Under the pieces are notes generated by a model. That model was not told the DNA's origin, did not search any database, and was given only the letters and a program-made list of their open reading frames with translations. Shown piece after piece: positions 2,471 to 63,778 of a DNA stretch of 64,000 nt. A program made the position numbers and the translations under genes. Source of the stretch: Narcine bancroftii (taxonomy: Eukaryota); NCBI RefSeq assembly GCF_036971445.1, contig NC_091476.1, forward strand, positions 101,246,001-101,310,000, in the 5' to 3' direction. Numbering within the stretch: the first letter of the stretch is position 1; the number at the start of each line of letters is the position of its first letter.

Positions 2471-3203
2471 TATATTTCGATTTCACACCCTTTGAAAAGG
2501 AACTGCCTGAATCTCATTTGCTAAATGAACCAATCTCATGATCAGGGGCCCTCATTGCAGAGATTGCGATTGTGAAGCTGTGCTTTATGACTGCACAGTC
2601 TACCTCAGTCAGTGCACAGCACTCACCATGACGCCATCACACAGTGTAATGCTTAGCAAGCACTGCTCAGAATTGCTTCTTGTGAACATGGCAAATTCTT
2701 TTCTCCTAAACTCAGTTGGTGAAATTGCTACTTACAAGAAAAGGCTTTCTGTTCATTGATCTGGAAGGCTGCTCAGTGAAGGAAAATGCCATTAAAAATC
2801 CACCCAGCTAAGGTCAAGCTTCTAAATGTTGTAATGAAGAAAGACACACAGAAGTTAGAGAATACCCATTTAAATTTTACATGAACCATTGCTGCTTGCT
2901 GCTTCTATTACCTGATTAGCATTTTTCAATATTAAACAATATTTCCTTCTGATAGGGTTCATCTGAAACAAAGGCAATATTGTCCCTGTATGAACAGTCT
3001 GAATTTTAATGAGGAAGGTAGATTTTGGTGTCATTTTATTATTTTTTTCTGTACAGTCAAAATGGTAAACTGTGAAACAACTCAACAAATGCTTACACCA
3101 TGATTGCTGGCTATTAGCCAGGGGTTATATTTGCTGCAGCAGGTGTCTAAACGAATCCAGAGAATACCAGTCGTTTATATAAAATATAAGATCATTTCCA
3201 TTA

Positions 3204-3354
3204 TCTTTGGCTTGGCTTCGCGGACGAAGATTTATGGAGGGGGTAAAAAGTCCACGTCAGTTGCAGGCTCGTTTGTGGCTGACAAGTCCGATGCGGGACA
3301 GGCAGACACGGTTGCAGCGGTTGCAGGGGAAAATTGGTTGGTTGGGGTTGGGTG
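3204..3354 (-). mobile_element. 5'-truncated RTE LINE, 3' end only
   Basis: Near-identical to the 3' end of the long RTE at 36720-36870. Confidence 0.9.
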
Positions 3355-21500: not shown

Positions 21501-22291
21501 GAAAGTTTTATGAGTTTCGGCTTTGAGGAGGAAGTTCCTGAGATAATGGTTACTTGTTGAAATCTTTTATTGATTTATTCTACAGCAGGCATGAACATAG
21601 TCAGCTACAGCCCTATCATCAAAGTAGAATCCAAGTTGTTATAGCATATCCATTCTGGGATAAAATGATGAGTCTCATGTATTTGCAAACAGGATAAAAT
21701 TCTCATCAAACACTGCACATGTAATGGAGAGGACTGGTAAAAGCTTTCATTGTAATGAAGAATCTCAACCAAATGATAGTTAATGATTTCCAAATATAAA
21801 GCTAGGGTGAATTGTCTGATTCTCTCAGATATAATTCATGCTCAGTGCTCACACACTCAGGAGAATTGTGTCCTCAGTAAGATCATTTGCAATAGTTCAG
21901 AATAAAATTTCAATGTGTGCCTATCTACTCCAATAAAAAAAGCCATGAAAATCCATGAACACAAAGCAGATAGGAATCAAATATGATATCCCGATGCTAG
22001 TGTCACTGAAGCCTGGAGTAGTCCAGGAGGCACCCAATCAAGCCATTGATTCTGCATAAATTCTCTCTAAAAGCAATCCAGATGAAACAATTTCATCATG
22101 AGTCATACAGTGTGGAAACAGACCCTTCGGCTCACTGAGTCCACGCTAACCATCAACACCCGTTTATACAAGTTTCATTTTATTCTCCCCATACTCTCAT
22201 TGTCTCCATCAGGCTGGTGCACGCACTTGTACACTAGAGGCAGTTTACAGTAGGCGATTAGTCTAACAAGTAGCATGTCTGTGCAAGGAAA

Positions 22292-22456
22292 AAACCCAAC
22301 ACCCAACCCCAATCAACCAATTTTCCCTTGCAACCGCTGCAACCATGTCTGCCTGTCCCGCATTGGACTTGTCAGCCACAAACTATCCTGCAGCTGACGT
22401 GGACTTTTCCCCTCCATAAATCTTCGTCCGCGAAGCCAAGCCAAAGAAAAAGAAGG
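22292..22456 (+). mobile_element. 5'-truncated RTE 3' end inserted in a SINE, with 20-bp TSD
   Basis: TSD AGCATGTCTGTGCAAGGAAA at 22272-22291 and 22457-22476; insert matches the RTE 3' end. Confidence 0.92.
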
Positions 22457-36222: not shown

Positions 36223-36519
36223 AAAGAGCAGGCCTTGGACCACCACCACCTAAAATGATAAGAAGATAAACATGATCAGATTTAATGTGTATAAGTAGAT
36301 GATAGGTCTTTTTTGTTTGTATTCCTTTTGTATAAAGTTATGGTTTTATTGTATTCTATATGTTCAATATTTATTGTTTTTGGAGGGGGTGGGAAGGGGG
36401 AAGGGAGGGATGGGGAAAAAAAAGAGAAAATGTCATTGTGAATATTTAAAGAGATGCATCTGTAAATATATTGATTGATATGGTTCATAGTGCGATGAAT
36501 AAAGAAATACAAAAAAAAA
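36223..36519 (+). mobile_element. Short 5'-truncated L1-type 3' UTR with poly(A)
   Basis: G-rich tract, AATAAA, A-tail; TSD ATTCTTCAAGGCC at 36210-36222 and 36521-36533. Confidence 0.75.
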
Positions 36520-36771
36520 CATTCTTCAAGGCCTCGTTCCTTTCCAATGTGATGGCTGGTACAAAAGTGTGCATGTTCTTTGTTGAACCCACCAGACAAT
36601 TTGACACTTCTTGCACCCATACAACAGTAAGCACAGAAATAAATATTACAGCTATTCTGTGCAAAATTACTGTAAAGCAAAATTGTTCCATTATTCCTTT
36701 TTTTTTTTCTTTTCTTTTTCTTTGGCTTGGCTTCGCGGACGAAGATTTATGGAGGGGGTAAAAAGTCCACG

Positions 36772-38484
36772 TCAGCTGCAGGCTCGTTTGTGGCTGACCA
36801 GTCCGATGCGGGACAGGCAGACACGATTGCAGCGGTTGCAAGGGAAAATTGGTTGGTTGGGGTTGGGTGTTGGGTTTTTCCTCCTTTGCCTTTTGTCAGT
36901 GAGGTGGGCTCTGCGGTCTTCTTCAAAGGAGGCTGCTGCCCGCCAAACTGTGAGGCGCCAAGATGCACGGTTTGAGGCTTTATCAGCCCACTGGCGGTGG
37001 TCAATGTGGCAGGCACCAAGAGATTTCTTTAGGCAGTCCTTGTACCTTTTCTTTGGTGCACCTCTGTCACGGTGGCCAGTGGAGAGCTCGCCATATAATA
37101 CGATCTTGGGAAGGCGATGGTCCTCCATTCTGGAGACGTGACCCATCCAGCGCAGCTGGATCTTCAGCAGCGTGGACTCGATGCTGTCGACCTCTGCCAT
37201 CTCGAGTACCTCGACGTTAGGGGTGTGAGCGCTCCAATGGATGTTGAGGATGGAGTGGAGACAACGCTGGTGGAAGCGTTCTAGGAGCCGTAGGTGGTGC
37301 CGGTAGAGGACCCATGATTCGGAGCCGAACAGGAGTGTGGGTATGACAACGGCTCTGTATACGCTTATCTTTGTGAGGTTTTTCAGTTGGTTGTTTTTCC
37401 AGACTCTTTTGTGTAGTCTTCCAAAGGCGCTATTTGCCTTGGCGAGTCTGTTGTCTATCTCATTGTCGATCCTTGCATCTGATGAAATGGTGCAGCCGAG
37501 ATAGGTAAACTGGTTGACCGTTTTGAGTTTTGTGTGCCCGATGGAGATGTGGGGGGGCTGGTAGTCATGGTGGGGAGCTGGCTGATGGAGGACCTCAGTT
37601 TTCTTCAGGCTGACTTCCAGGCCAAACATTTTGGCAGTTTCCGCAAAGCAGGACGTCAAGCGCTGAAGAGCTGGCTCTGAATGGGCAACTAAAGCGGCAT
37701 CATCTGCAAAGAGTAGTTCACGGACAAGTTTCTCTTGTGTCTTGGTGTGAGCTTGCAGGCGCCTCAGATTGAAGAGACTGCCATCCGTGCGGTACCGGAT
37801 GTAAACAGCGTCTTCATTGTTGGGGTCTTTCATGGCTTGGTTCAGCATCATGCTGAAGAAGATTGAAAAGAGGGTTGGTGCGAGAACACAGCCTTGCTTC
37901 ACGCCATTGTTAATGGAGAAGGGTTCAGAGAGCTCATTGCTGTATCTGACCCGACCTTGTTGGTTTTCGTGCAGTTGGATAATCATGTTGAGGAACTTTG
38001 GGGGACATCCGATGCGCTCTAGTATTTGCCAAAGCCCTTTCCTGCTCACGGTGTCGAAGGCTTTGGTGAGGTCAACAAAGGTGATGTAGAGTCCTTTGTT
38101 TTGTTCTCTACACTTTTCTTGGAGCTGTCTGAGGGCAAAGACCATGTCAGTGGTTCCTCTGTTAGCGCGAAAGCCGCACTGTGATTCTGGGAGAATATTC
38201 TCAGCGACACTAGGTATTATTCTATTTAGTAGAATCCTAGCGAAGATTTTGCCTGCAATGGAGAGCAACGTGATTCCCCTGTAGTTTGAGCAGTCTGATT
38301 TCTCGCCTTTGTTTTTGTACAGGGTGATGATGGTGGCATCACGAAGATCCTGAGGCAGTTTACCTTGGTCCCAACAAAGCTTGAAAAACTCATGCAGTTT
38401 GGCATGCAGAGTTTTGCCGCCAGCCTTCCAGACTTCTGGGGGGATTCCATCCATACCTGCTGCTTTGCCACTTTTCAGCTGTTC
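36772..38484 (-). CDS. RTE reverse transcriptase half (570 codons, no stops, C-terminal Cys/His motif)
   Basis: NYRGITLLS, QCGFR, FVDLTKAFD, GVKQGCVLAP, LFADD, YLG, CNRCNRVC...HKRAC. Confidence 0.93.
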   Translation of the reverse strand, partial: EQLKSGKAAGMDGIPPEVWKAGGKTLHAKLHEFFKLCWDQGKLPQDLRDATIITLYKNKGEKSDCSNYRGITLLSIAGKIFARILLNRIIPSVAENILPESQCGFRANRGTTDMVFALRQLQEKCREQNKGLYITFVDLTKAFDTVSRKGLWQILERIGCPPKFLNMIIQLHENQQGRVRYSNELSEPFSINNGVKQGCVLAPTLFSIFFSMMLNQAMKDPNNEDAVYIRYRTDGSLFNLRRLQAHTKTQEKLVRELLFADDAALVAHSEPALQRLTSCFAETAKMFGLEVSLKKTEVLHQPAPHHDYQPPHISIGHTKLKTVNQFTYLGCTISSDARIDNEIDNRLAKANSAFGRLHKRVWKNNQLKNLTKISVYRAVVIPTLLFGSESWVLYRHHLRLLERFHQRCLHSILNIHWSAHTPNVEVLEMAEVDSIESTLLKIQLRWMGHVSRMEDHRLPKIVLYGELSTGHRDRGAPKKRYKDCLKKSLGACHIDHRQWADKASNRASWRLTVWRAAASFEEDRRAHLTDKRQRRKNPTPNPNQPIFPCNRCNRVCLSRIGLVSHKRACS

Positions 38485-38680
38485 CGATACGGGCAGGAGC
38501 AAGGGGGAGACGGCGGCCCCGGCCTCGGTCGAGTGAGGCAGACGGAGGCCCCGGTCCGGGCAGTATGGACCGACCTAGGAGGGGAGGCAGGCCCCTCCAG
38601 CCCGGGTAAGAAACCTGCATAGGAGAAGGCCACTCCGATATAAAACCTACGACCCAAGGACCTCGCTGCCACGTCCCAGC

Positions 38681-40453
38681 TTGCTTGGCCACGGCACACG
38701 AACCATGGGTGTAAAGGGTGGGGCCAGTACTGCGCGCACTGCACTCCACCTAAAAGCTCCTTTGCGCAGGCCCGAGGACAGGTCCACGTCCTCCCCCTCC
38801 ACGTCCTCCCCCTCCACGTCCTCCCCCTCCACGTCCTCCCCCTCCACGTCCTCCCCCTCCACGTCCTCCCCCTCCACGTCCTCCCCCTCCACGTCCTCCC
38901 CCTCCACGTCCTCCCCCTCAAAAGATGCTCACAAACTCAAGCTAGCATGCTGGAACATCAGAACCATGCTAGATAAGACTGACAGCCATCGACCTGAACG
39001 TCGGTCTGCCCTCATTGCACATGAACTCCTCAGACTTGACATCGACATAGCCGCTCTCAGTGAAGTCCGCCTGGCAGATGTAGGCAGCTTCCAAGAACGC
39101 GGCGCGGGCTACACACTCTACTGGTCTGGCAAGCCTTCGGATGAACGACGCCTATCTGGTGTAGGCTTCATGGTCAAGAGCTTCATTGCCTCCAAACTCG
39201 AAAACCTTCCGACAGGCCTCTCGGACCGAATCATGTCCATGCGACTCCCACTTCAAAACAAGCGTCACATCACCCTCATCAGTGTCTATGCTCCAACCCT
39301 CCAGGCGGAACCAGTAGAAAAGAACAAGTTCTACACCGACCTGCGCAACCTCATCCAACGTACCCCTACAGCCGACAAGGTTGTCATCCTGGGCGACTTC
39401 AACGCTCGTGTCGGCAAAGACTCAGAAACCTGGCCAGGAATCCTGGGCAAGCATGGCGTCGGCAAGTGCAACGACAATGGGCGCCTCCTGTTGGAGCTCT
39501 GCGCAGAACAGCGGCTTGTCATTACAAACACCCTTTTTCAGCAGAGGGACAGCCTTAAGACCACCTGGATGCATCCCCGATCCAAACACTGGCACCTCCT
39601 GGACTACATCCTGGTGCGAGAAAGTGACAAACAAGATGTGCTCCACACCAGGGTCATGCCTAGCGCGGAATGCCACACTGACCACCGGCTGGTTCGCTGC
39701 AAGCTCAACCTTCACTTCAAGCCAAAGCCCAGGAACAATAAAGCCCCCAGAAAGAGGTTCAATGTTGGAAAACTGCAGTCAGACGAAGCGAGAGGAAACT
39801 TCCAGGCAAACCTCAAAGCAAAGCTCGACGTTGCAACCCGCCTCACGGACCCGTCCCCTGAAACCCTCTGGGATCAGTTGAAGACTACCATACTGCAATC
39901 CACTGAAGAGGTACTGGGCTTCTCCTCCAGGAAAAACAAGGACTGGTTTGACGAAAACAGCCAGGAAATCCAGGAGCTGCTGGCAAAGAAGCGAGCTGCC
40001 CACCAGGCTCACCTTACAAAGCCGTCCTGTCCAGAGAAGAAACAAGCCTTCCGTCGCGCATGCAGCCATCTTCAGCGCAAACTCCGGGAGATCCAAAATG
40101 AGTGGTGGACTAACCTCGCCAAACGAACACAGCTCAGCGCGGACATTGGCGACTTCAGGGGTTTCTACGAGGCTCTAAAGGCTGTGTACGGCCCCTCACC
40201 CCAAGTCCAAAGCCCGCTGCGCAGCTCAGACGGCAAAGTCCTCCTCAGCGACAAGATCTCCATCCTCAACCGATGGTCAGAACACTTCCAATCTCTTTTC
40301 AGTACCAACCGCTCAGTCCAAGATTCCGCCCTGCTCCAGCTCCCTCAACAGCCCCTAAGGCTAGAGCTGGATGAGGTTCCCACCCTGGATGAGACATATA
40401 AGGCAATCCATTATTCCTACTGCAACATTAAAGAGTTAATTAGTTATAAATAA
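38681..40453 (+). CDS. RTE APE endonuclease half; last 14 codons come from flanking DNA
   Basis: WNIRT, LSEVR, VYAPT, LGDFNARVG, LDYI, TDHRLV motifs. RTE homology ends at YKAI (40408). First in-frame ATG is at 38705-38707 region (MGVKGG); the annotated start is a TTG. Confidence 0.9.
   Translation: MLGHGTRTMGVKGGASTARTALHLKAPLRRPEDRSTSSPSTSSPSTSSPSTSSPSTSSPSTSSPSTSSPSTSSPSTSSPSKDAHKLKLACWNIRTMLDKTDSHRPERRSALIAHELLRLDIDIAALSEVRLADVGSFQERGAGYTLYWSGKPSDERRLSGVGFMVKSFIASKLENLPTGLSDRIMSMRLPLQNKRHITLISVYAPTLQAEPVEKNKFYTDLRNLIQRTPTADKVVILGDFNARVGKDSETWPGILGKHGVGKCNDNGRLLLELCAEQRLVITNTLFQQRDSLKTTWMHPRSKHWHLLDYILVRESDKQDVLHTRVMPSAECHTDHRLVRCKLNLHFKPKPRNNKAPRKRFNVGKLQSDEARGNFQANLKAKLDVATRLTDPSPETLWDQLKTTILQSTEEVLGFSSRKNKDWFDENSQEIQELLAKKRAAHQAHLTKPSCPEKKQAFRRACSHLQRKLREIQNEWWTNLAKRTQLSADIGDFRGFYEALKAVYGPSPQVQSPLRSSDGKVLLSDKISILNRWSEHFQSLFSTNRSVQDSALLQLPQQPLRLELDEVPTLDETYKAIHYSYCNIKELISYK
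38783..38917 (+). repeat. Perfect 15-bp minisatellite x9 (TCCACGTCCTCCCCC) encoding (STSSP)9
   Basis: Read directly from the sequence; in frame just before the APE domain. Confidence 0.97.
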
Positions 40454-41517
40454 CTTGTAAACCACTGGCTTTTCTGTTTTATATAAATTGAAATTAGTGA
40501 ATGTATACAACCCAAGACAAATAAAAGTTGACTACTGACACATATTTCTTCTAAAACAATGATTGCTGATCATATTTTCAGCTGCAATAACTAGTTCATT
40601 GAAATATTTTAATAGTTGCACTGTGGTGCAATGAATTGTTCGTCTTTGTGTGATCAAGAATGTAGTTCACAGGACCAGTACATTGTAGATCAAGGTCAAC
40701 GCATCAGCCAACATGAATCTACTATAAAAATTTGTGCGCTGTCTTTCTTTATCACCCAGAATGTTTTAACAGAATGCCATGAAGGGACACAGGTTTAGGG
40801 TGGTGTTGTTACCATGGAAAATGGCCATTTATGGGAGAGAACGTACTTTTCAATGGCCAAAATGTTAAAGAAACAATTACACTGTGTTTTCTGGACCAGA
40901 TCTTCCCCAATATCAAAAGCATATTGCTATCTCATATACACTGGCTGAAAACTCAAACCATGCATTGCCAAGAGAAAACGGATTGTTCTTGCCTACAACT
41001 GGTACAGATTTAATTAGGAAAATTGCTCATTTTTTGCAACCATTCTTTGATTCTATAAAGAAAATCAAGACTTTTGAAAACAAATGATGTTGTTATGCCT
41101 TATTTTTTAAATTCCGCTTCAGAAAAATAGAGAAAGATGTGGAATGGAGACTACTGAGAGATTTGCAATTCTTTTCAACACCCTGCTGCATATCTGCAAT
41201 TCATATCAAGTTCTAAGCATATGAATAAAGGCCATGATAAGCTGCAACAGAAAGAAATGAATGTTTTTTGCTACTTCCCTCCAGCCATGGAATAGGATCA
41301 GGATACTTCCAGTAAATTCTATTATAAAGAAATTCTGAGCAAATCCAACATTTCCTAACAAAGTAACCTACAACAAAAAAATCAGTTGTACTGTTACGGT
41401 GTTATAATCTGTTACAGTGTGCTGACCGGCTGCACCCCTGAGTGGAAAGCTCTGCAAGAGGTGGTGAACACAACCCAGGACATCACAGGCAAAACCCTCC
41501 ACTCCACAGAACATCTG

Positions 41518-50433: not shown

Positions 50434-51367
50434 TTCTCTTCTTCTTCTTTGGCTTGGCTTCGCGGACGAAGATTTATGAAGGGGTAATTGTCCACGTCAG
50501 CTGCAGGCTCGTTTGTGGCTGACAAGTCCGATTCGGGACAGGCAGACACGGTTGCAGCGGTTACAGGGGAAAATTGGTGGGTTGGGGATGGATGTTGGGA
50601 TTTTCCTCCTTTGTCTTTTGTCAGTGAGGTGGGCTCTGTGGTCTTCTTCCAAGGAGGTTGCTGCCCGCCGAACTGTGAGGTGCCAAGATGCACGGTTGGA
50701 GGCGATATCAGCCCACTGGCAGTGGTCAATGGGGCAGGCACCAAGAGATTTCTTTAGGCAGTCCTTGTACCTCTTCTTTGGTGCACCTCTGTCTCGGTGG
50801 CCAGTGGAGAGCTCGCCATATAACACGATCTTGGGAAGGCGATGGTCCTCCATTCTGGAGACGTGACCTACCCAGCGCAGTTGGATCTTCAGCAGCATGG
50901 ATTCGATGCTGTCAGCCTCTGCCATCTCGAGTACTTCAATGTTGGTGATGAAGTCGCTCCAATGAATGTTGAGGATGGAGCGGAGACAACGTTGGTGGAA
51001 GCGTTCTAGGAGCCGTAGGTGATGCCGGTAAAGGACCCATGATTCGGAGCCGAACAGGAGTGTGGGTATGACAACGGCTCTGTATACGCTAACCTTTGTG
51101 AGGTTTTTCAGTTGGTTGTTTTTCCAGACTCTTTTGTGTAGTCTTCCAAAGGTGCTATTTGCCTTGGAGAGTCTGTTGTCTATCTCGTTGTCGATCCTTG
51201 CATCCAATGAAATGGTGCAGCCGAGATAGGTAAACTGGTTGACCGTTTTGAGTTTTGTGTGCCCGATGGAGATGTGGTAGTCATGGTGGGGAGCTGGTGA
51301 TGGAGGACCTCAGTTTTCTTCAGACTGACTTCCAGGCCAAACATTTTGGCAGTTTCTGCAAAACAGG
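50434..51367 (-). mobile_element. 5'-truncated RTE, somewhat older copy or subfamily
   Basis: Homologous to 36720-37650 with more substitutions and small deletions; (GAA)n tail; no clear TSD. Confidence 0.92.
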
Positions 51368-61617: not shown

Positions 61618-61717
61618 TCTTTGGCTTGGCTTCGCGGACGAAGATTTATGGAGGGGGTAAAAGTCCACGTCAGCTGCAGGCTCGTTTGTGGCTGACAAGT
61701 CCGATGCGGGATAGGCA
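61618..61717 (-). mobile_element. 100-bp RTE 3' end with 17-bp TSD
   Basis: TCTCCCACACTTTAGTG at 61601-61617 and 61718-61734. Confidence 0.93.
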
Positions 61718-61959
61718 TCTCCCACACTTTAGTGGATAACAAATGTAAAGGGCAGCACTCACCACTAGGGGAGATCTTGCTCAACCTTTTAAACAGCAGA
61801 TGAGAGACAGGTGTTCTTCCTGTTTATTCCTCATTAGATAAAGGAAGGGCAAAAAAAAGATGGAACAGATGTGCAGGATTCGTATTCAATAAAAAAAAGA
61901 TGCTTCACTTGTATGCTAATCTGCCTTAGGGAAATGCTAATTTATTTATGTCTCATTCT

Positions 61960-62937
61960 CTTCTCTTTGGCTTGGCTTCGCGGACGAAGATTTATGGAGG
62001 GGGTAAAAAGTCCACGTCAGCTGCAGGCTCGTTTGTGGCTGACCAGTCCGATGCGGGACAGGCAGACACGATTGCAGCGGTTGCAAGGGAAAATTGGTTG
62101 GTTGGGGTTGGGTGTTGGGTTTTTCCTCCTTTGCCTTTTGTCAGTGAGGTGGGCTCTGTGGTCTTCTTCAAAGGAGGCTGCTGCCCGCCAAACTGTGAGG
62201 CGCCAAGATGCACGGTTTGAGGCGTTATCAGCCCACTGGCGGTGGTCAATGTGGCAGGCACCAAGAGATTTCTTTAGGCAGTCCTTGTACCTTTTCTTTG
62301 GTGCACCTCTGTCACGGTGGCCAGTGGCGAGCTCGCCATATAATACGATCTTGGGAAGGCGATGGTCCTCCATTCTGGAGACGTGACCCATCCAGCGCAG
62401 CTGGATCTTCAGCAGCGTGGACTCGATGCTGTCGACCTCTGCCATCTCGAGTACCTCGACGTTAGGGGTGTGAGCGCTCCAATGGATGTTGAGGATGGAG
62501 CGGAGACAACGCTGGTGGAAGCGTTCTAGGAGCCGTAGGTGGTGCCGGTAGAGGACCCATGATTCGGAGCCGAACAGGAGTGTGGGTATGACAACGGCTC
62601 TGTATACGCTTATCTTTGTGAGGTTTTTCAGTTGGTTGTTTTTCCAGACTCTTTTGTGTAGTCTTCCAAAGGCGCTATTTGCCTTGGCGAGTCTGTTGTC
62701 TATCTCATTGTCGATCCTTGCATCTGATGAAATGGTGCAGCCGAGATAGGTAAACTTGTTGACCGTTTTGAGTTTTGTGTGCCCGATGGAGATGTGGGGG
62801 GGCTGGTAGTCATGGTGGGGAGCTGGCTGATGGAGGACCTCAGTTTTCTTCAGGCTGACTTCCAGGCCAAACATTTTGGCAGTTTCCGCAAAGCAGGACG
62901 TCAAGCGCTGAAGAGCTGGCTCTGAATGGGCAACTAA
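61960..62937 (-). mobile_element. Young 5'-truncated RTE with open reading frame and 11-bp TSD
   Basis: Nearly identical to 36720-37691. TSD TGTCTCATTCT at 61949-61959 and 62948-62958. Confidence 0.95.
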
Positions 62938-63778
62938 TGAGACATGGTGTCTCATTCTACTGCTTCATTAATGCACCATGCCTCAGAAATGAAAATTCAC
63001 CAAGTTACATGTCATATGAGCAGAGTTGTGATGCATTTCCCCTTCTTTCTCTCTCTTCCTTTCCACTTTTCCAACAAGTGAAGTTCTTTTTAGAGATACC
63101 ACCCAACAAGCTGCACCGCTCAAATACACTAATTAACCTACAAACACTGGATATCTTTGGAGGGTGGGAGGAAATCGGAGCACACAGACAAAACGTGCAA
63201 ACCTCTTACAGACTGCACTGGAGTCACACCTGGGTTGCAGGCACTGTAACAGTGTTGCGCTACCTACTACACTAATCGTGTCACCCTGTTGCATTGAATG
63301 TTCTCTGGCTTTCATTCCTTTTGACTGTGAAATAAGGACGTCCTGAGTTACAAAGCAATCATTGGGGCTGTTAAAGTGCAGTAAGGTGACTCCAAAGTCC
63401 CATTCCATGGGACAGAATCCCAACTCCAGGAAGTACTGAAATAGCAGGATTTAGTTAGATCCTTGGCCCCCATTTCCAGTGAACACAACCTAGCACAAGA
63501 TGTCTGAAGTGTGATTGTTTTACAGTGATAAAGTGGAACACATGGTGCTTTAAAAAAATGCAGGAGAGTAGTGAAAATTATTTTACAGATGGGACTTATT
63601 TTGAGAAGAACCCTTTGCCGTGATAAAAATATCTAAACAATTCTGTGAAGATGAAATGTTACAATGAAACCAATCTAGCGAGTCAGTAATGACTCCCAGG
63701 CCCATTGGAGTAAAACATGACTACAATTTTCAAAGGACAGGATTTAAATAATTTGAATAAAACAATCTAAATCATTAT

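What the first reader, a model, noticed from the sequence alone, without database searches (positions are those of the whole stretch)
36687..40418. Twin-priming-type 5' inversion in an RTE LINE with no coding loss
Seen: in tail orientation the order is TSD, inverted 5' half, 3' half, tail, TSD. The plus half ends ...TAT AAG GCA ATC (YKAI, 40408) and the minus half starts GAA CAG CTG AAA (EQLK, 38484). Re-inverting gives a continuous stop-free ORF of about 1140 aa, apparently with nothing lost or duplicated. The internal breakpoint shares TC with the TSD. Established: this geometry is the twin-priming signature described mainly for mammalian L1. Inference: an RTE in a non-mammalian vertebrate uses the same pathway, and reverse transcription from the second primer ran well into the 5' UTR.
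Basis: partly seen in the sequence, partly recalled or inferred. Interest (0 to 1): 0.85.

Follow-up and report, generated by a model that had tools for sequence, protein, structure and literature searches.

The report
5'-inverted RTE-like LINE insertion
One 3.7-kb copy of an RTE-like retrotransposon, probably in an electric ray genome, was inserted with its front half flipped; every junction fits the "twin priming" accident known from mammalian L1, so it is a clear new example of a known process.

Summary
A perfect 12-bp target-site duplication (36687-36698 and 40407-40418) brackets one non-LTR retrotransposon copy. Its 3' half (reverse transcriptase, 3' UTR, A/G-rich tail) lies on the minus strand at 36699-38484. 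Its 5' half (220 nt of 5' UTR, ATG, endonuclease) lies on the plus strand at 38485-40408.

Contigs from four public runs, labelled as four organisms, contain uninverted copies in which base 40408 is followed directly by the complement of 38484. Twenty-three longer relatives place the last residue of one half and the first residue of the other on adjacent positions. So nothing was lost or duplicated. One uninverted contig matches both halves at about 99.3%.

The TC at 40407-40408 is shared by element and duplication. That is the 2-nt pairing expected where the second-strand nick primed on the RNA.

Twin priming in a single insertion event is the best explanation (0.85). The element is clearly not L1. 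It is RTE-like in architecture, but its clade was not placed by phylogeny. The inner junction was not verified in reads and no empty site was found.

First readers of this scan flagged four more inverted copies in the same genome, all unchecked. The kind is known and the family and host are new, so interest is moderate.

The parts
36687..36698 (.). Target-site duplication, tail-side copy (TCCATTATTCCT). Its 3' end on the + strand is the first-strand primer.
   Evidence: the 12-mer occurs only here and at 40407-40418.
36699..36718 (-). A/G-rich microsatellite-like tail ending in A11, read on the minus strand. The inner limit is approximate.
   Evidence: five other copies in the window share the 3' end ...GCCAAGCCAAAGA, and each is followed by a different short purine-rich tail.
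36719..36771 (-). Short 3' UTR, conserved among copies.
   Evidence: alignment of six 3' ends by eye., BLAST hits at 92-99% identity.
36772..38484 (-). 3' half of the single ORF: 570 codons plus stop. It holds RVT_1 at 37486-38301, an FADD motif, and a C-terminal CX2CX12HX3C zinc-finger-like motif at 36778-36840.
   Evidence: translation; Pfam; only weak PDB matches to the R2 and L1 RT cores.
38484..38485 (.). Inversion junction. The 3' end of the first cDNA (the element base next to the second priming site) is joined to the far end of the second cDNA (inside the 5' UTR). Overlap is 0-1 nt.
   Evidence: A loose end in run X6 shows another copy with a C upstream of 38485. The junction itself was not verified in reads.
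38485..38704 (+). 220 nt of GC-rich 5' UTR with a roughly 67-nt repeated unit.
   Evidence: contigs of other runs match 38547-38812 without differences, there is a 'goes back 67' joint, and other copies continue upstream.
38705..40408 (+). 5' half of the ORF, 568 codons from the ATG. It holds an in-frame 15-bp x 9 repeat (38783-38919), an APE-type endonuclease (about 38951-39694) and a linker. The last codon is ATC at 40406-40408.
40407..40418 (.). Target-site duplication, second copy. Its first two bases (TC, 40407-40408) are also the next two bases of the element, giving a 2-nt microhomology at the second priming site.
   Evidence: uninverted copies run through 40408 and then into the complement of 38484.

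Best explanation
This is a single retrotransposition event of an RTE-like, APE-type LINE that went through twin priming.

Shown by the sequence:
- The element's endonuclease nicked the window's + strand after ...TTCCT (5'-CT^ACTG-3').
- That 3' end primed cDNA 1 on the A/G-rich tail of the RNA.
- The other strand was cut 12 bp away (5'-TGGA^ACAA-3' on the minus strand).

Inferred:
- The freed 3' overhang ending ...GGA paired its last two bases (GA) with an internal UC of the same RNA. It then primed cDNA 2 towards the RNA's 5' end, running about 1.9 kb into the 5' UTR.
- cDNA 1 stopped at the very next base 3' of the second primer site, so nothing was lost or duplicated. This argues for a collision on one RNA molecule without strand displacement.
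- The two cDNA 3' ends were then joined with 0-1 nt of overlap, by end joining or a template jump, and were copied.

The product has the order TSD, tail, RT half (minus strand), 5' UTR plus endonuclease half (plus strand), TSD. It was dead on arrival, because endonuclease and reverse transcriptase lie on opposite strands. It is young, because both frames are still open.
For: - Perfect 12-bp TSD found only at the two outer borders.
- Tail directly next to one TSD copy. An internal element base next to the other, with a 2-nt overlap.
- Exact adjacency of the two breakpoints in uninverted copies: joint 38484<->40408, opposite strands, both = 0, 10 contigs in 4 runs.
- Adjacent residues in 23 longer relatives.
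- A Narcine bancroftii gene model (P0051) reads antisense straight through an uninverted junction, TTC|GATTGCC....
- One uninverted contig (X6 record 20) matches both halves with 6/694 and 4/775 differences, so both come from the same subfamily.
- Summed contig depth declines smoothly in element coordinates across the rejoined point, 0.95M versus 1.18M.
- A contig of run X1 crosses the right outer junction from the flank to 40379. Another reaches the left TSD.
- TSDs of this family in the window are 11, 12, 17 and 20 bp. That is the 10-20 bp range in which 5' inversions were seen for L1 (PMC4245944).
- Microhomology at the 5' junction is the commonest feature of 5'-inverted L1 (PMC2912911).
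Against: - The inner junction 38484/38485 was not shown to be crossed by any read or contig in the tables returned. It lies in very high-copy sequence.
- Run X1 may be the sample the assembly was made from, so its support for the outer junctions is not independent.
- No empty site was found. The flanks had no coverage in the other three organisms, and there is no paralogous site in the window.
- A 2-nt microhomology arises by chance once in 16.
- This is a single event.
Confidence: 0.85

Rival explanations
1. Assembly artefact: a segment of a high-copy repeat was placed in the wrong orientation or joined wrongly during assembly.
For: The family is extremely abundant, with 93,080 contig pieces laid in one run. 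No listed piece spans the whole stretch or the inner junction.
Against: A mis-join would not place an internal element base exactly against a second copy of the 12-bp sequence that flanks the tail. It would also not make the two breakpoints exactly adjacent in element coordinates. A contig from the flank crosses the right outer junction 29 nt into the inverted half.
Confidence: 0.06
2. Ordinary near-full-length insertion followed later by a DNA inversion of its 5' 1.9 kb, through breakage and rejoining.
For: The final geometry would be the same. Nothing in one sequence dates the inversion relative to the insertion.
Against: One inversion breakpoint would have to fall exactly on the element/TSD border, and neither breakpoint could lose or gain a base. 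No inverted repeats or other footprints lie at the breakpoints. Twin priming predicts the coincidence and the 2-nt overlap without extra assumptions.
Confidence: 0.04
3. Two separate insertion events, or a second cDNA primed on a different RNA molecule of the same family.
For: RNAs of the family were presumably abundant. 5'-truncated copies are common in the window.
Against: The plus-strand half has no tail and no TSD of its own. With two independent templates or events, the breakpoints would not be expected to abut to the base, at roughly 1 chance in a few thousand.
Confidence: 0.04

Closest known systems
5'-inverted L1 insertions of human and mouse made by twin priming (Ostertag & Kazazian 2001, as summarised in PMC2912911 and PMC4245944)
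   Same: - One TSD around the whole insert, and the tail at one end.
- The inverted 5' segment abuts the other TSD with microhomology.
- The two segments are adjacent in element coordinates.
- The TSD falls in the 10-20 bp class.
- The product is dead on arrival.
   Different: - The element is not L1. It has a single ORF and no ORF1.
- The endonuclease half has no PDB match. The RT matches L1 ORF2p only weakly (1e-18 over 215 aa), no better than it matches R2.
- The tail is A/G-rich and microsatellite-like, not a long poly(A).
- The nick context is CT^ACT rather than TTTT^AA.
- The host is a cartilaginous fish.
- The junction shows exactly zero loss or gain.
The single 5'-inverted Nimb-2_DR insert recovered in chicken DT40 cells (PMC4245944)
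   Same: A non-L1 vertebrate LINE with TSDs of about 12 bp that gave a 5' inversion.
   Different: That was one event in a cell-culture assay with a zebrafish element of another clade. Here it is a natural genomic copy of an RTE-like family. First readers flagged four further inverted copies in the same genome, all unchecked.
RTE-clade LINEs such as Bov-B (PMC6007223, PMC13295347)
   Same: - Roughly 3-4 kb with one ORF holding APE endonuclease and RT.
- Very short 3' UTR and a microsatellite-like tail.
- The TSD starts with A preceded by T, with a T-run about a helical turn upstream.
- Wide, patchy spread among unrelated animals.
   Different: Clade membership was not tested by phylogeny. This family has a C-terminal zinc-finger-like motif, a monomer-like GC-rich 5' UTR and an N-terminal pentapeptide repeat. 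In the papers I could search, I found no report of 5' inversions for RTE-clade elements.

Membership tests
Twin-priming-type 5'-inverted LINE insertion | A single target-site duplication flanks the composite of both segments. | tested here: met
   A 12-bp perfect repeat occurs only at 36687-36698 and 40407-40418.
Twin-priming-type 5'-inverted LINE insertion | The 3' segment is in sense orientation and ends with the element's tail against one TSD copy. | tested here: met
   The RT half, 3' UTR and tail on the minus strand abut 36698.
Twin-priming-type 5'-inverted LINE insertion | The inverted 5' segment has its 3'-most element base against the other TSD copy, usually with microhomology. | tested here: met
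   The plus half ends at 40406/40408. The TC at 40407-40408 belongs to both the element and the TSD.
Twin-priming-type 5'-inverted LINE insertion | The two segments are adjacent, or nearly so, in the element's own coordinates and come from one source. | tested here: met
   Joint 38484<->40408 with no ambiguity in 10 contigs of 4 runs. One contig matches both halves at about 99.3%. Adjacent residues in 23 relatives.
Twin-priming-type 5'-inverted LINE insertion | The structure exists in the genome: reads cross the inversion junction, and an empty site has one copy of the TSD. | tested here: inconclusive
   The outer junctions are reached by contigs of X1 only. The inner junction is not shown. 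No empty site was found.
RTE clade of non-LTR retrotransposons | Single ORF with N-terminal APE-type endonuclease and RT, no ORF1, total length about 3-4 kb. | tested here: met
   Exo_endo_phos and RVT_1 are the only domains. Only 220 nt lie upstream of the ATG. Element length is 3.7 kb.
RTE clade of non-LTR retrotransposons | Very short 3' UTR ending in short microsatellite-like repeats. | tested here: met
   The 3' UTR is about 50 nt. Six copies have different short A/G-rich tails.
RTE clade of non-LTR retrotransposons | The RT groups with RTE reference elements in a phylogeny. | not testable with these tools
   No classified reference sequences were available. The only indirect hint is that a 78%-identical endonuclease relative is named 'craniofacial development protein 2-like'. 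From my own knowledge, that name traces to the Bov-B/RTE-1 endonuclease domain in cattle.
RTE clade of non-LTR retrotransposons | Tn-TA target signature: the TSD starts with A after T, about 10 nt downstream of a T-run (PMC13295347). | tested here: inconclusive
   The sense strand reads ...CTTTAATGTTGCAGT|AGGAAT.... Three of four copies with a TSD in the window show CT^ACT at the nick. Four sites are too few for a test.
L1 clade | ORF1 plus ORF2, poly(A) tail, TTTT^AA nick site, and close similarity to L1 ORF2p. | tested here: not met
   There is no ORF1. The tail is A/G-rich and the nick is CT^ACTG. The RT half matches L1 ORF2p at only 1e-18 over 215 aa, no better than R2. The endonuclease half has no PDB match although L1 ORF2p is in the PDB.

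The most novel reading that the evidence does not exclude
Twin priming may be a regular pathway of this RTE-like family in a cartilaginous fish, not a one-off. Several independent 5'-inverted copies would then share long TSDs (11-20 bp) and base-exact or near-exact abutment. That would show that 5' inversion depends on the length of the target overhang and on early second-strand cleavage, not on L1-specific proteins or mammalian host factors. It would also suggest that this RT stops rather than displaces at the second primer.
Probability: 0.45. Interest if true: 0.55.

Novelty: new member of a known kind. Interest (0 to 1): 0.4.

Why it matters
5' inversion by twin priming is documented almost only for mammalian L1. 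In cell-culture assays it appeared only with L1 in human cells, plus one Nimb-2_DR insert in chicken cells. This led to the view that it depends on the LINE and on the host, and needs 10-20 nt overhangs (PMC4245944). Kojima likewise suggested that early top-strand cleavage may be nearly exclusive to L1 (PMC2912911).

A natural, base-resolved case in an RTE-like element of a ray, with a 12-bp TSD, a 2-nt primer overlap and zero loss, extends the process to another clade and another vertebrate lineage. It also fits the overhang-length idea. For genome annotation, such copies can be misread as two opposed fragments or as intact genes.

Tried and rejected
- Rfam at gathering thresholds on the whole window, and at permissive thresholds on 38400-38800, found no ribozyme or other RNA family in the 5' UTR.
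I therefore could not fetch other copies of the family as DNA, and could not define the full-length 5' end.
- BLAST of 1 kb of each flank against the window found no paralogous empty site.
- The flanks had no coverage in the three other organisms' runs, so no orthologous empty site was seen.
- Ostertag & Kazazian 2001 (PMC311219) is not held. The model is cited through PMC2912911 and PMC4245944.
- Paper searches for twin priming together with RTE, BovB, CR1 or non-mammalian hosts returned no report of RTE-clade 5' inversions. This covers only the held library.
- I did not build, translate or search the re-joined (re-inverted) reading frame. The two halves were searched separately by reference, and contiguity was judged from alignment coordinates.
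- Names of protein hits did not settle the clade. They included 'jockey', 'LINE-1 ORF2', 'endonuclease-reverse transcriptase' and 'uncharacterized'.
Full report
**What is in the sequence**

The 12-mer TCCATTATTCCT occurs exactly twice in the 64-kb window, at 36687-36698 and 40407-40418. It cannot be extended on either side.

Between the two copies lie 3.7 kb of one non-LTR retrotransposon in two oppositely oriented pieces.

- **36699-38484, read on the minus strand.** This piece holds an open frame of 570 codons plus a stop. It starts EQLK, contains RVT_1 (E 5.6e-36) with an FADD motif, and ends in a CX2CX12HX3C motif. A roughly 50-nt 3' UTR and a short A/G-rich tail follow and touch the left 12-mer.
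- **38485-40408, read on the plus strand.** This piece holds 220 nt of GC-rich leader and an ATG at 38705. An in-frame 15-bp x 9 repeat follows, then an APE-type endonuclease domain (Exo_endo_phos, E 1.9e-12) and a linker ending ...TYKAI.

The last codon, ATC, occupies 40406-40408, so its TC is also the first two bases of the right 12-mer. The two frames sum to 1138 codons. The halves were handled separately by reference.

**Are the two halves exactly contiguous in normal copies?** Yes, on three lines of evidence.

1. I laid Logan contigs of four public runs, coded as four organisms, on 36500-40600. This gave a joint '38484 <-> 40408, opposite strands' with no ambiguous letters in all four runs (6, 2, 1 and 1 contigs). 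In one 1469-nt contig, letters 1-775 lie on +39634-40408 and letters 776-1469 lie on -38484-37791. That contig differs at 4 of 775 and 6 of 694 positions, so both halves belong to the same subfamily.
2. A phmmer search of 1.8 billion representatives found 16 relatives of 1000 aa or more. In every one, the last residue of the 5' half and the first residues of the 3' half align to adjacent positions. Seven closer relatives (60-79% identity) from a second search do the same, for example 413|414 in P0165 and 375|376 in P0163.
3. A RefSeq model from Narcine bancroftii (P0051, 99% identical over 167 aa) begins with an antisense reading that runs straight through an uninverted junction, TTC|GATTGCC....

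Summed contig depth also declines smoothly from 3' to 5' in element coordinates across the rejoined point.

**Mechanism**

On the window's + strand, the left 12-mer is followed directly by the complement of the tail. So the first nick was 5'-...TTCCT^ACTG-3', and that end primed cDNA 1.

The second nick, 12 bp away on the other strand (5'-...TGGA^ACAA-3'), left a primer ending in GA. This GA is complementary to the UC that ends the 5' half in the RNA. The minus strand then reads primer, followed by the complement of ...TATAAGGCAA and so on. This is what priming at that internal site would produce.

cDNA 1 ends at the base immediately 3' of that site. This explains why nothing is lost or duplicated. 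It also argues that both cDNAs were made on one RNA molecule and that the first polymerase stopped at the second primer without displacing it.

cDNA 2 ran about 1.9 kb, to 220 nt upstream of the ATG. A contig from another run continues upstream of 38485 with related GC-rich sequence. Other copies carry extra units of about 67 nt. The copy is therefore probably truncated inside a monomer-like 5' UTR, and the RNA's 5' end was probably not reached.

The inner junction shows at most one shared base (C), judged from a single loose end.

The steps after the two nicks are inferred from the product. The product itself is what the sequence shows.

**Rivals**

- **Assembly error.** This would not reproduce the flanking 12-mer at an internal element base, and would not make the breakpoints abut to the base. 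A contig from the right flank enters the inverted half by 29 nt.
- **Later DNA inversion.** This needs one breakpoint exactly on the element/TSD border and no loss at either break.
- **Two events or two RNA templates.** Neither would give base-exact abutment, and the plus half has no tail and no TSD of its own.

What remains open is that no listed read or contig crosses 38484/38485, that run X1 may be the assembly's own sample, and that no empty site was found.

**What kind of element**

It is not L1. There is no ORF1. The RT half matches L1 ORF2p (1e-18) no better than R2 (3e-21), and only over the RT core. The endonuclease half has no PDB match at all.

The architecture fits the RTE clade as described in PMC6007223 and PMC13295347:
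- one ORF in 3.7 kb;
- a very short 3' UTR;
- variable A/G-rich tails in six copies;
- a TSD that starts with A after T, with a T-run a helical turn upstream.

Three of four copies with a TSD in the window share the nick context CT^ACT, and their TSDs are 11, 12, 17 and 20 bp. A 78%-identical endonuclease relative is named 'craniofacial development protein 2-like'. From my own knowledge, that name goes back to a Bov-B/RTE-1 endonuclease domain. No tree with classified references could be made, so I call the element RTE-like rather than RTE.

The host is probably the electric ray Narcine bancroftii or a close relative. This is judged from the 99%, 91% and 87% identical RefSeq proteins.

**Comparison with what is known**

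Twin priming was proposed for L1. Microhomology at the 5' junction is the most frequent feature of 5'-inverted L1 (PMC2912911).

In retrotransposition assays with human L1, zebrafish ZfL2-1 and Nimb-2_DR, 5' inversions appeared only with L1 in human cells, plus one Nimb-2_DR insert in DT40 cells. They went with TSDs of 10-20 bp (PMC4245944). The present copy has a 12-bp TSD and fits that rule.

My searches of the held library found no report of 5' inversion in RTE-clade elements.

First readers of this scan flagged four other 5'-inverted RTE copies in the same genome. I could not check them, and they are not counted as evidence.

**Verdict**

This is a new, unusually clean example of a known process in a new LINE family and host. 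It is not a new kind of mechanism. Interest is moderate. It would rise if a genome-wide count showed that inversion is a regular outcome for this family.

Noticed in passing
window 36775-38484 (-) and protein hits: The RT half is 70-80% identical in protein over nearly its full length to proteins from very distant marine and aquatic animals. These include a sea urchin (Diadema), shrimps (Penaeus), a mantis shrimp, teleosts (Oryzias, Cirrhinus), amphioxus and sea slugs. The pattern looks like repeated horizontal transfer. That is already known for RTE-type LINEs in marine animals (PMC7846101, PMC5055719).
   Followed up: partly
window 38783-38919: A perfect in-frame 15-bp x 9 tandem repeat encodes (STSSP)n just upstream of the endonuclease domain. 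Contigs of other copies skip 114-121 bp here, so the repeat number varies between copies.
   Followed up: partly
window 38485-38704: The GC-rich 5' UTR has a unit of about 67 nt (CGGGCAG at 38490 and 38557). Other copies show a 'goes back 67' joint and many loose ends at 38563 with related sequence. This suggests a variable, monomer-like 5' UTR as in mouse L1.
   Followed up: partly
window 61956-62945, 61618-61717, 22285-22454, 50434-51367, 3195-3354: Five 5'-truncated copies of the same family lie here, at 92-99% identity. Three have clear TSDs of 11, 17 and 20 bp. Two of those three, plus the main copy, show the same nick context CT^ACT.
   Followed up: partly
protein P0051 (XP_069764561.1, Narcine bancroftii): This RefSeq 'uncharacterized protein' is a chimeric model made only of transposon sequence. 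Its first 41 residues are read antisense across the RT/linker boundary of an uninverted copy. They are followed by 167 residues of the sense linker region.
   Followed up: yes
Read-laying runs X5, X6, X9 (coded organisms B, C, F): Contigs from runs labelled as other organisms match parts of the element with no differences over 170-370 nt, while the flanks are absent. These are either very close relatives of the host or very recent sharing of the family. The names are coded, so I could not tell which.
   Followed up: no
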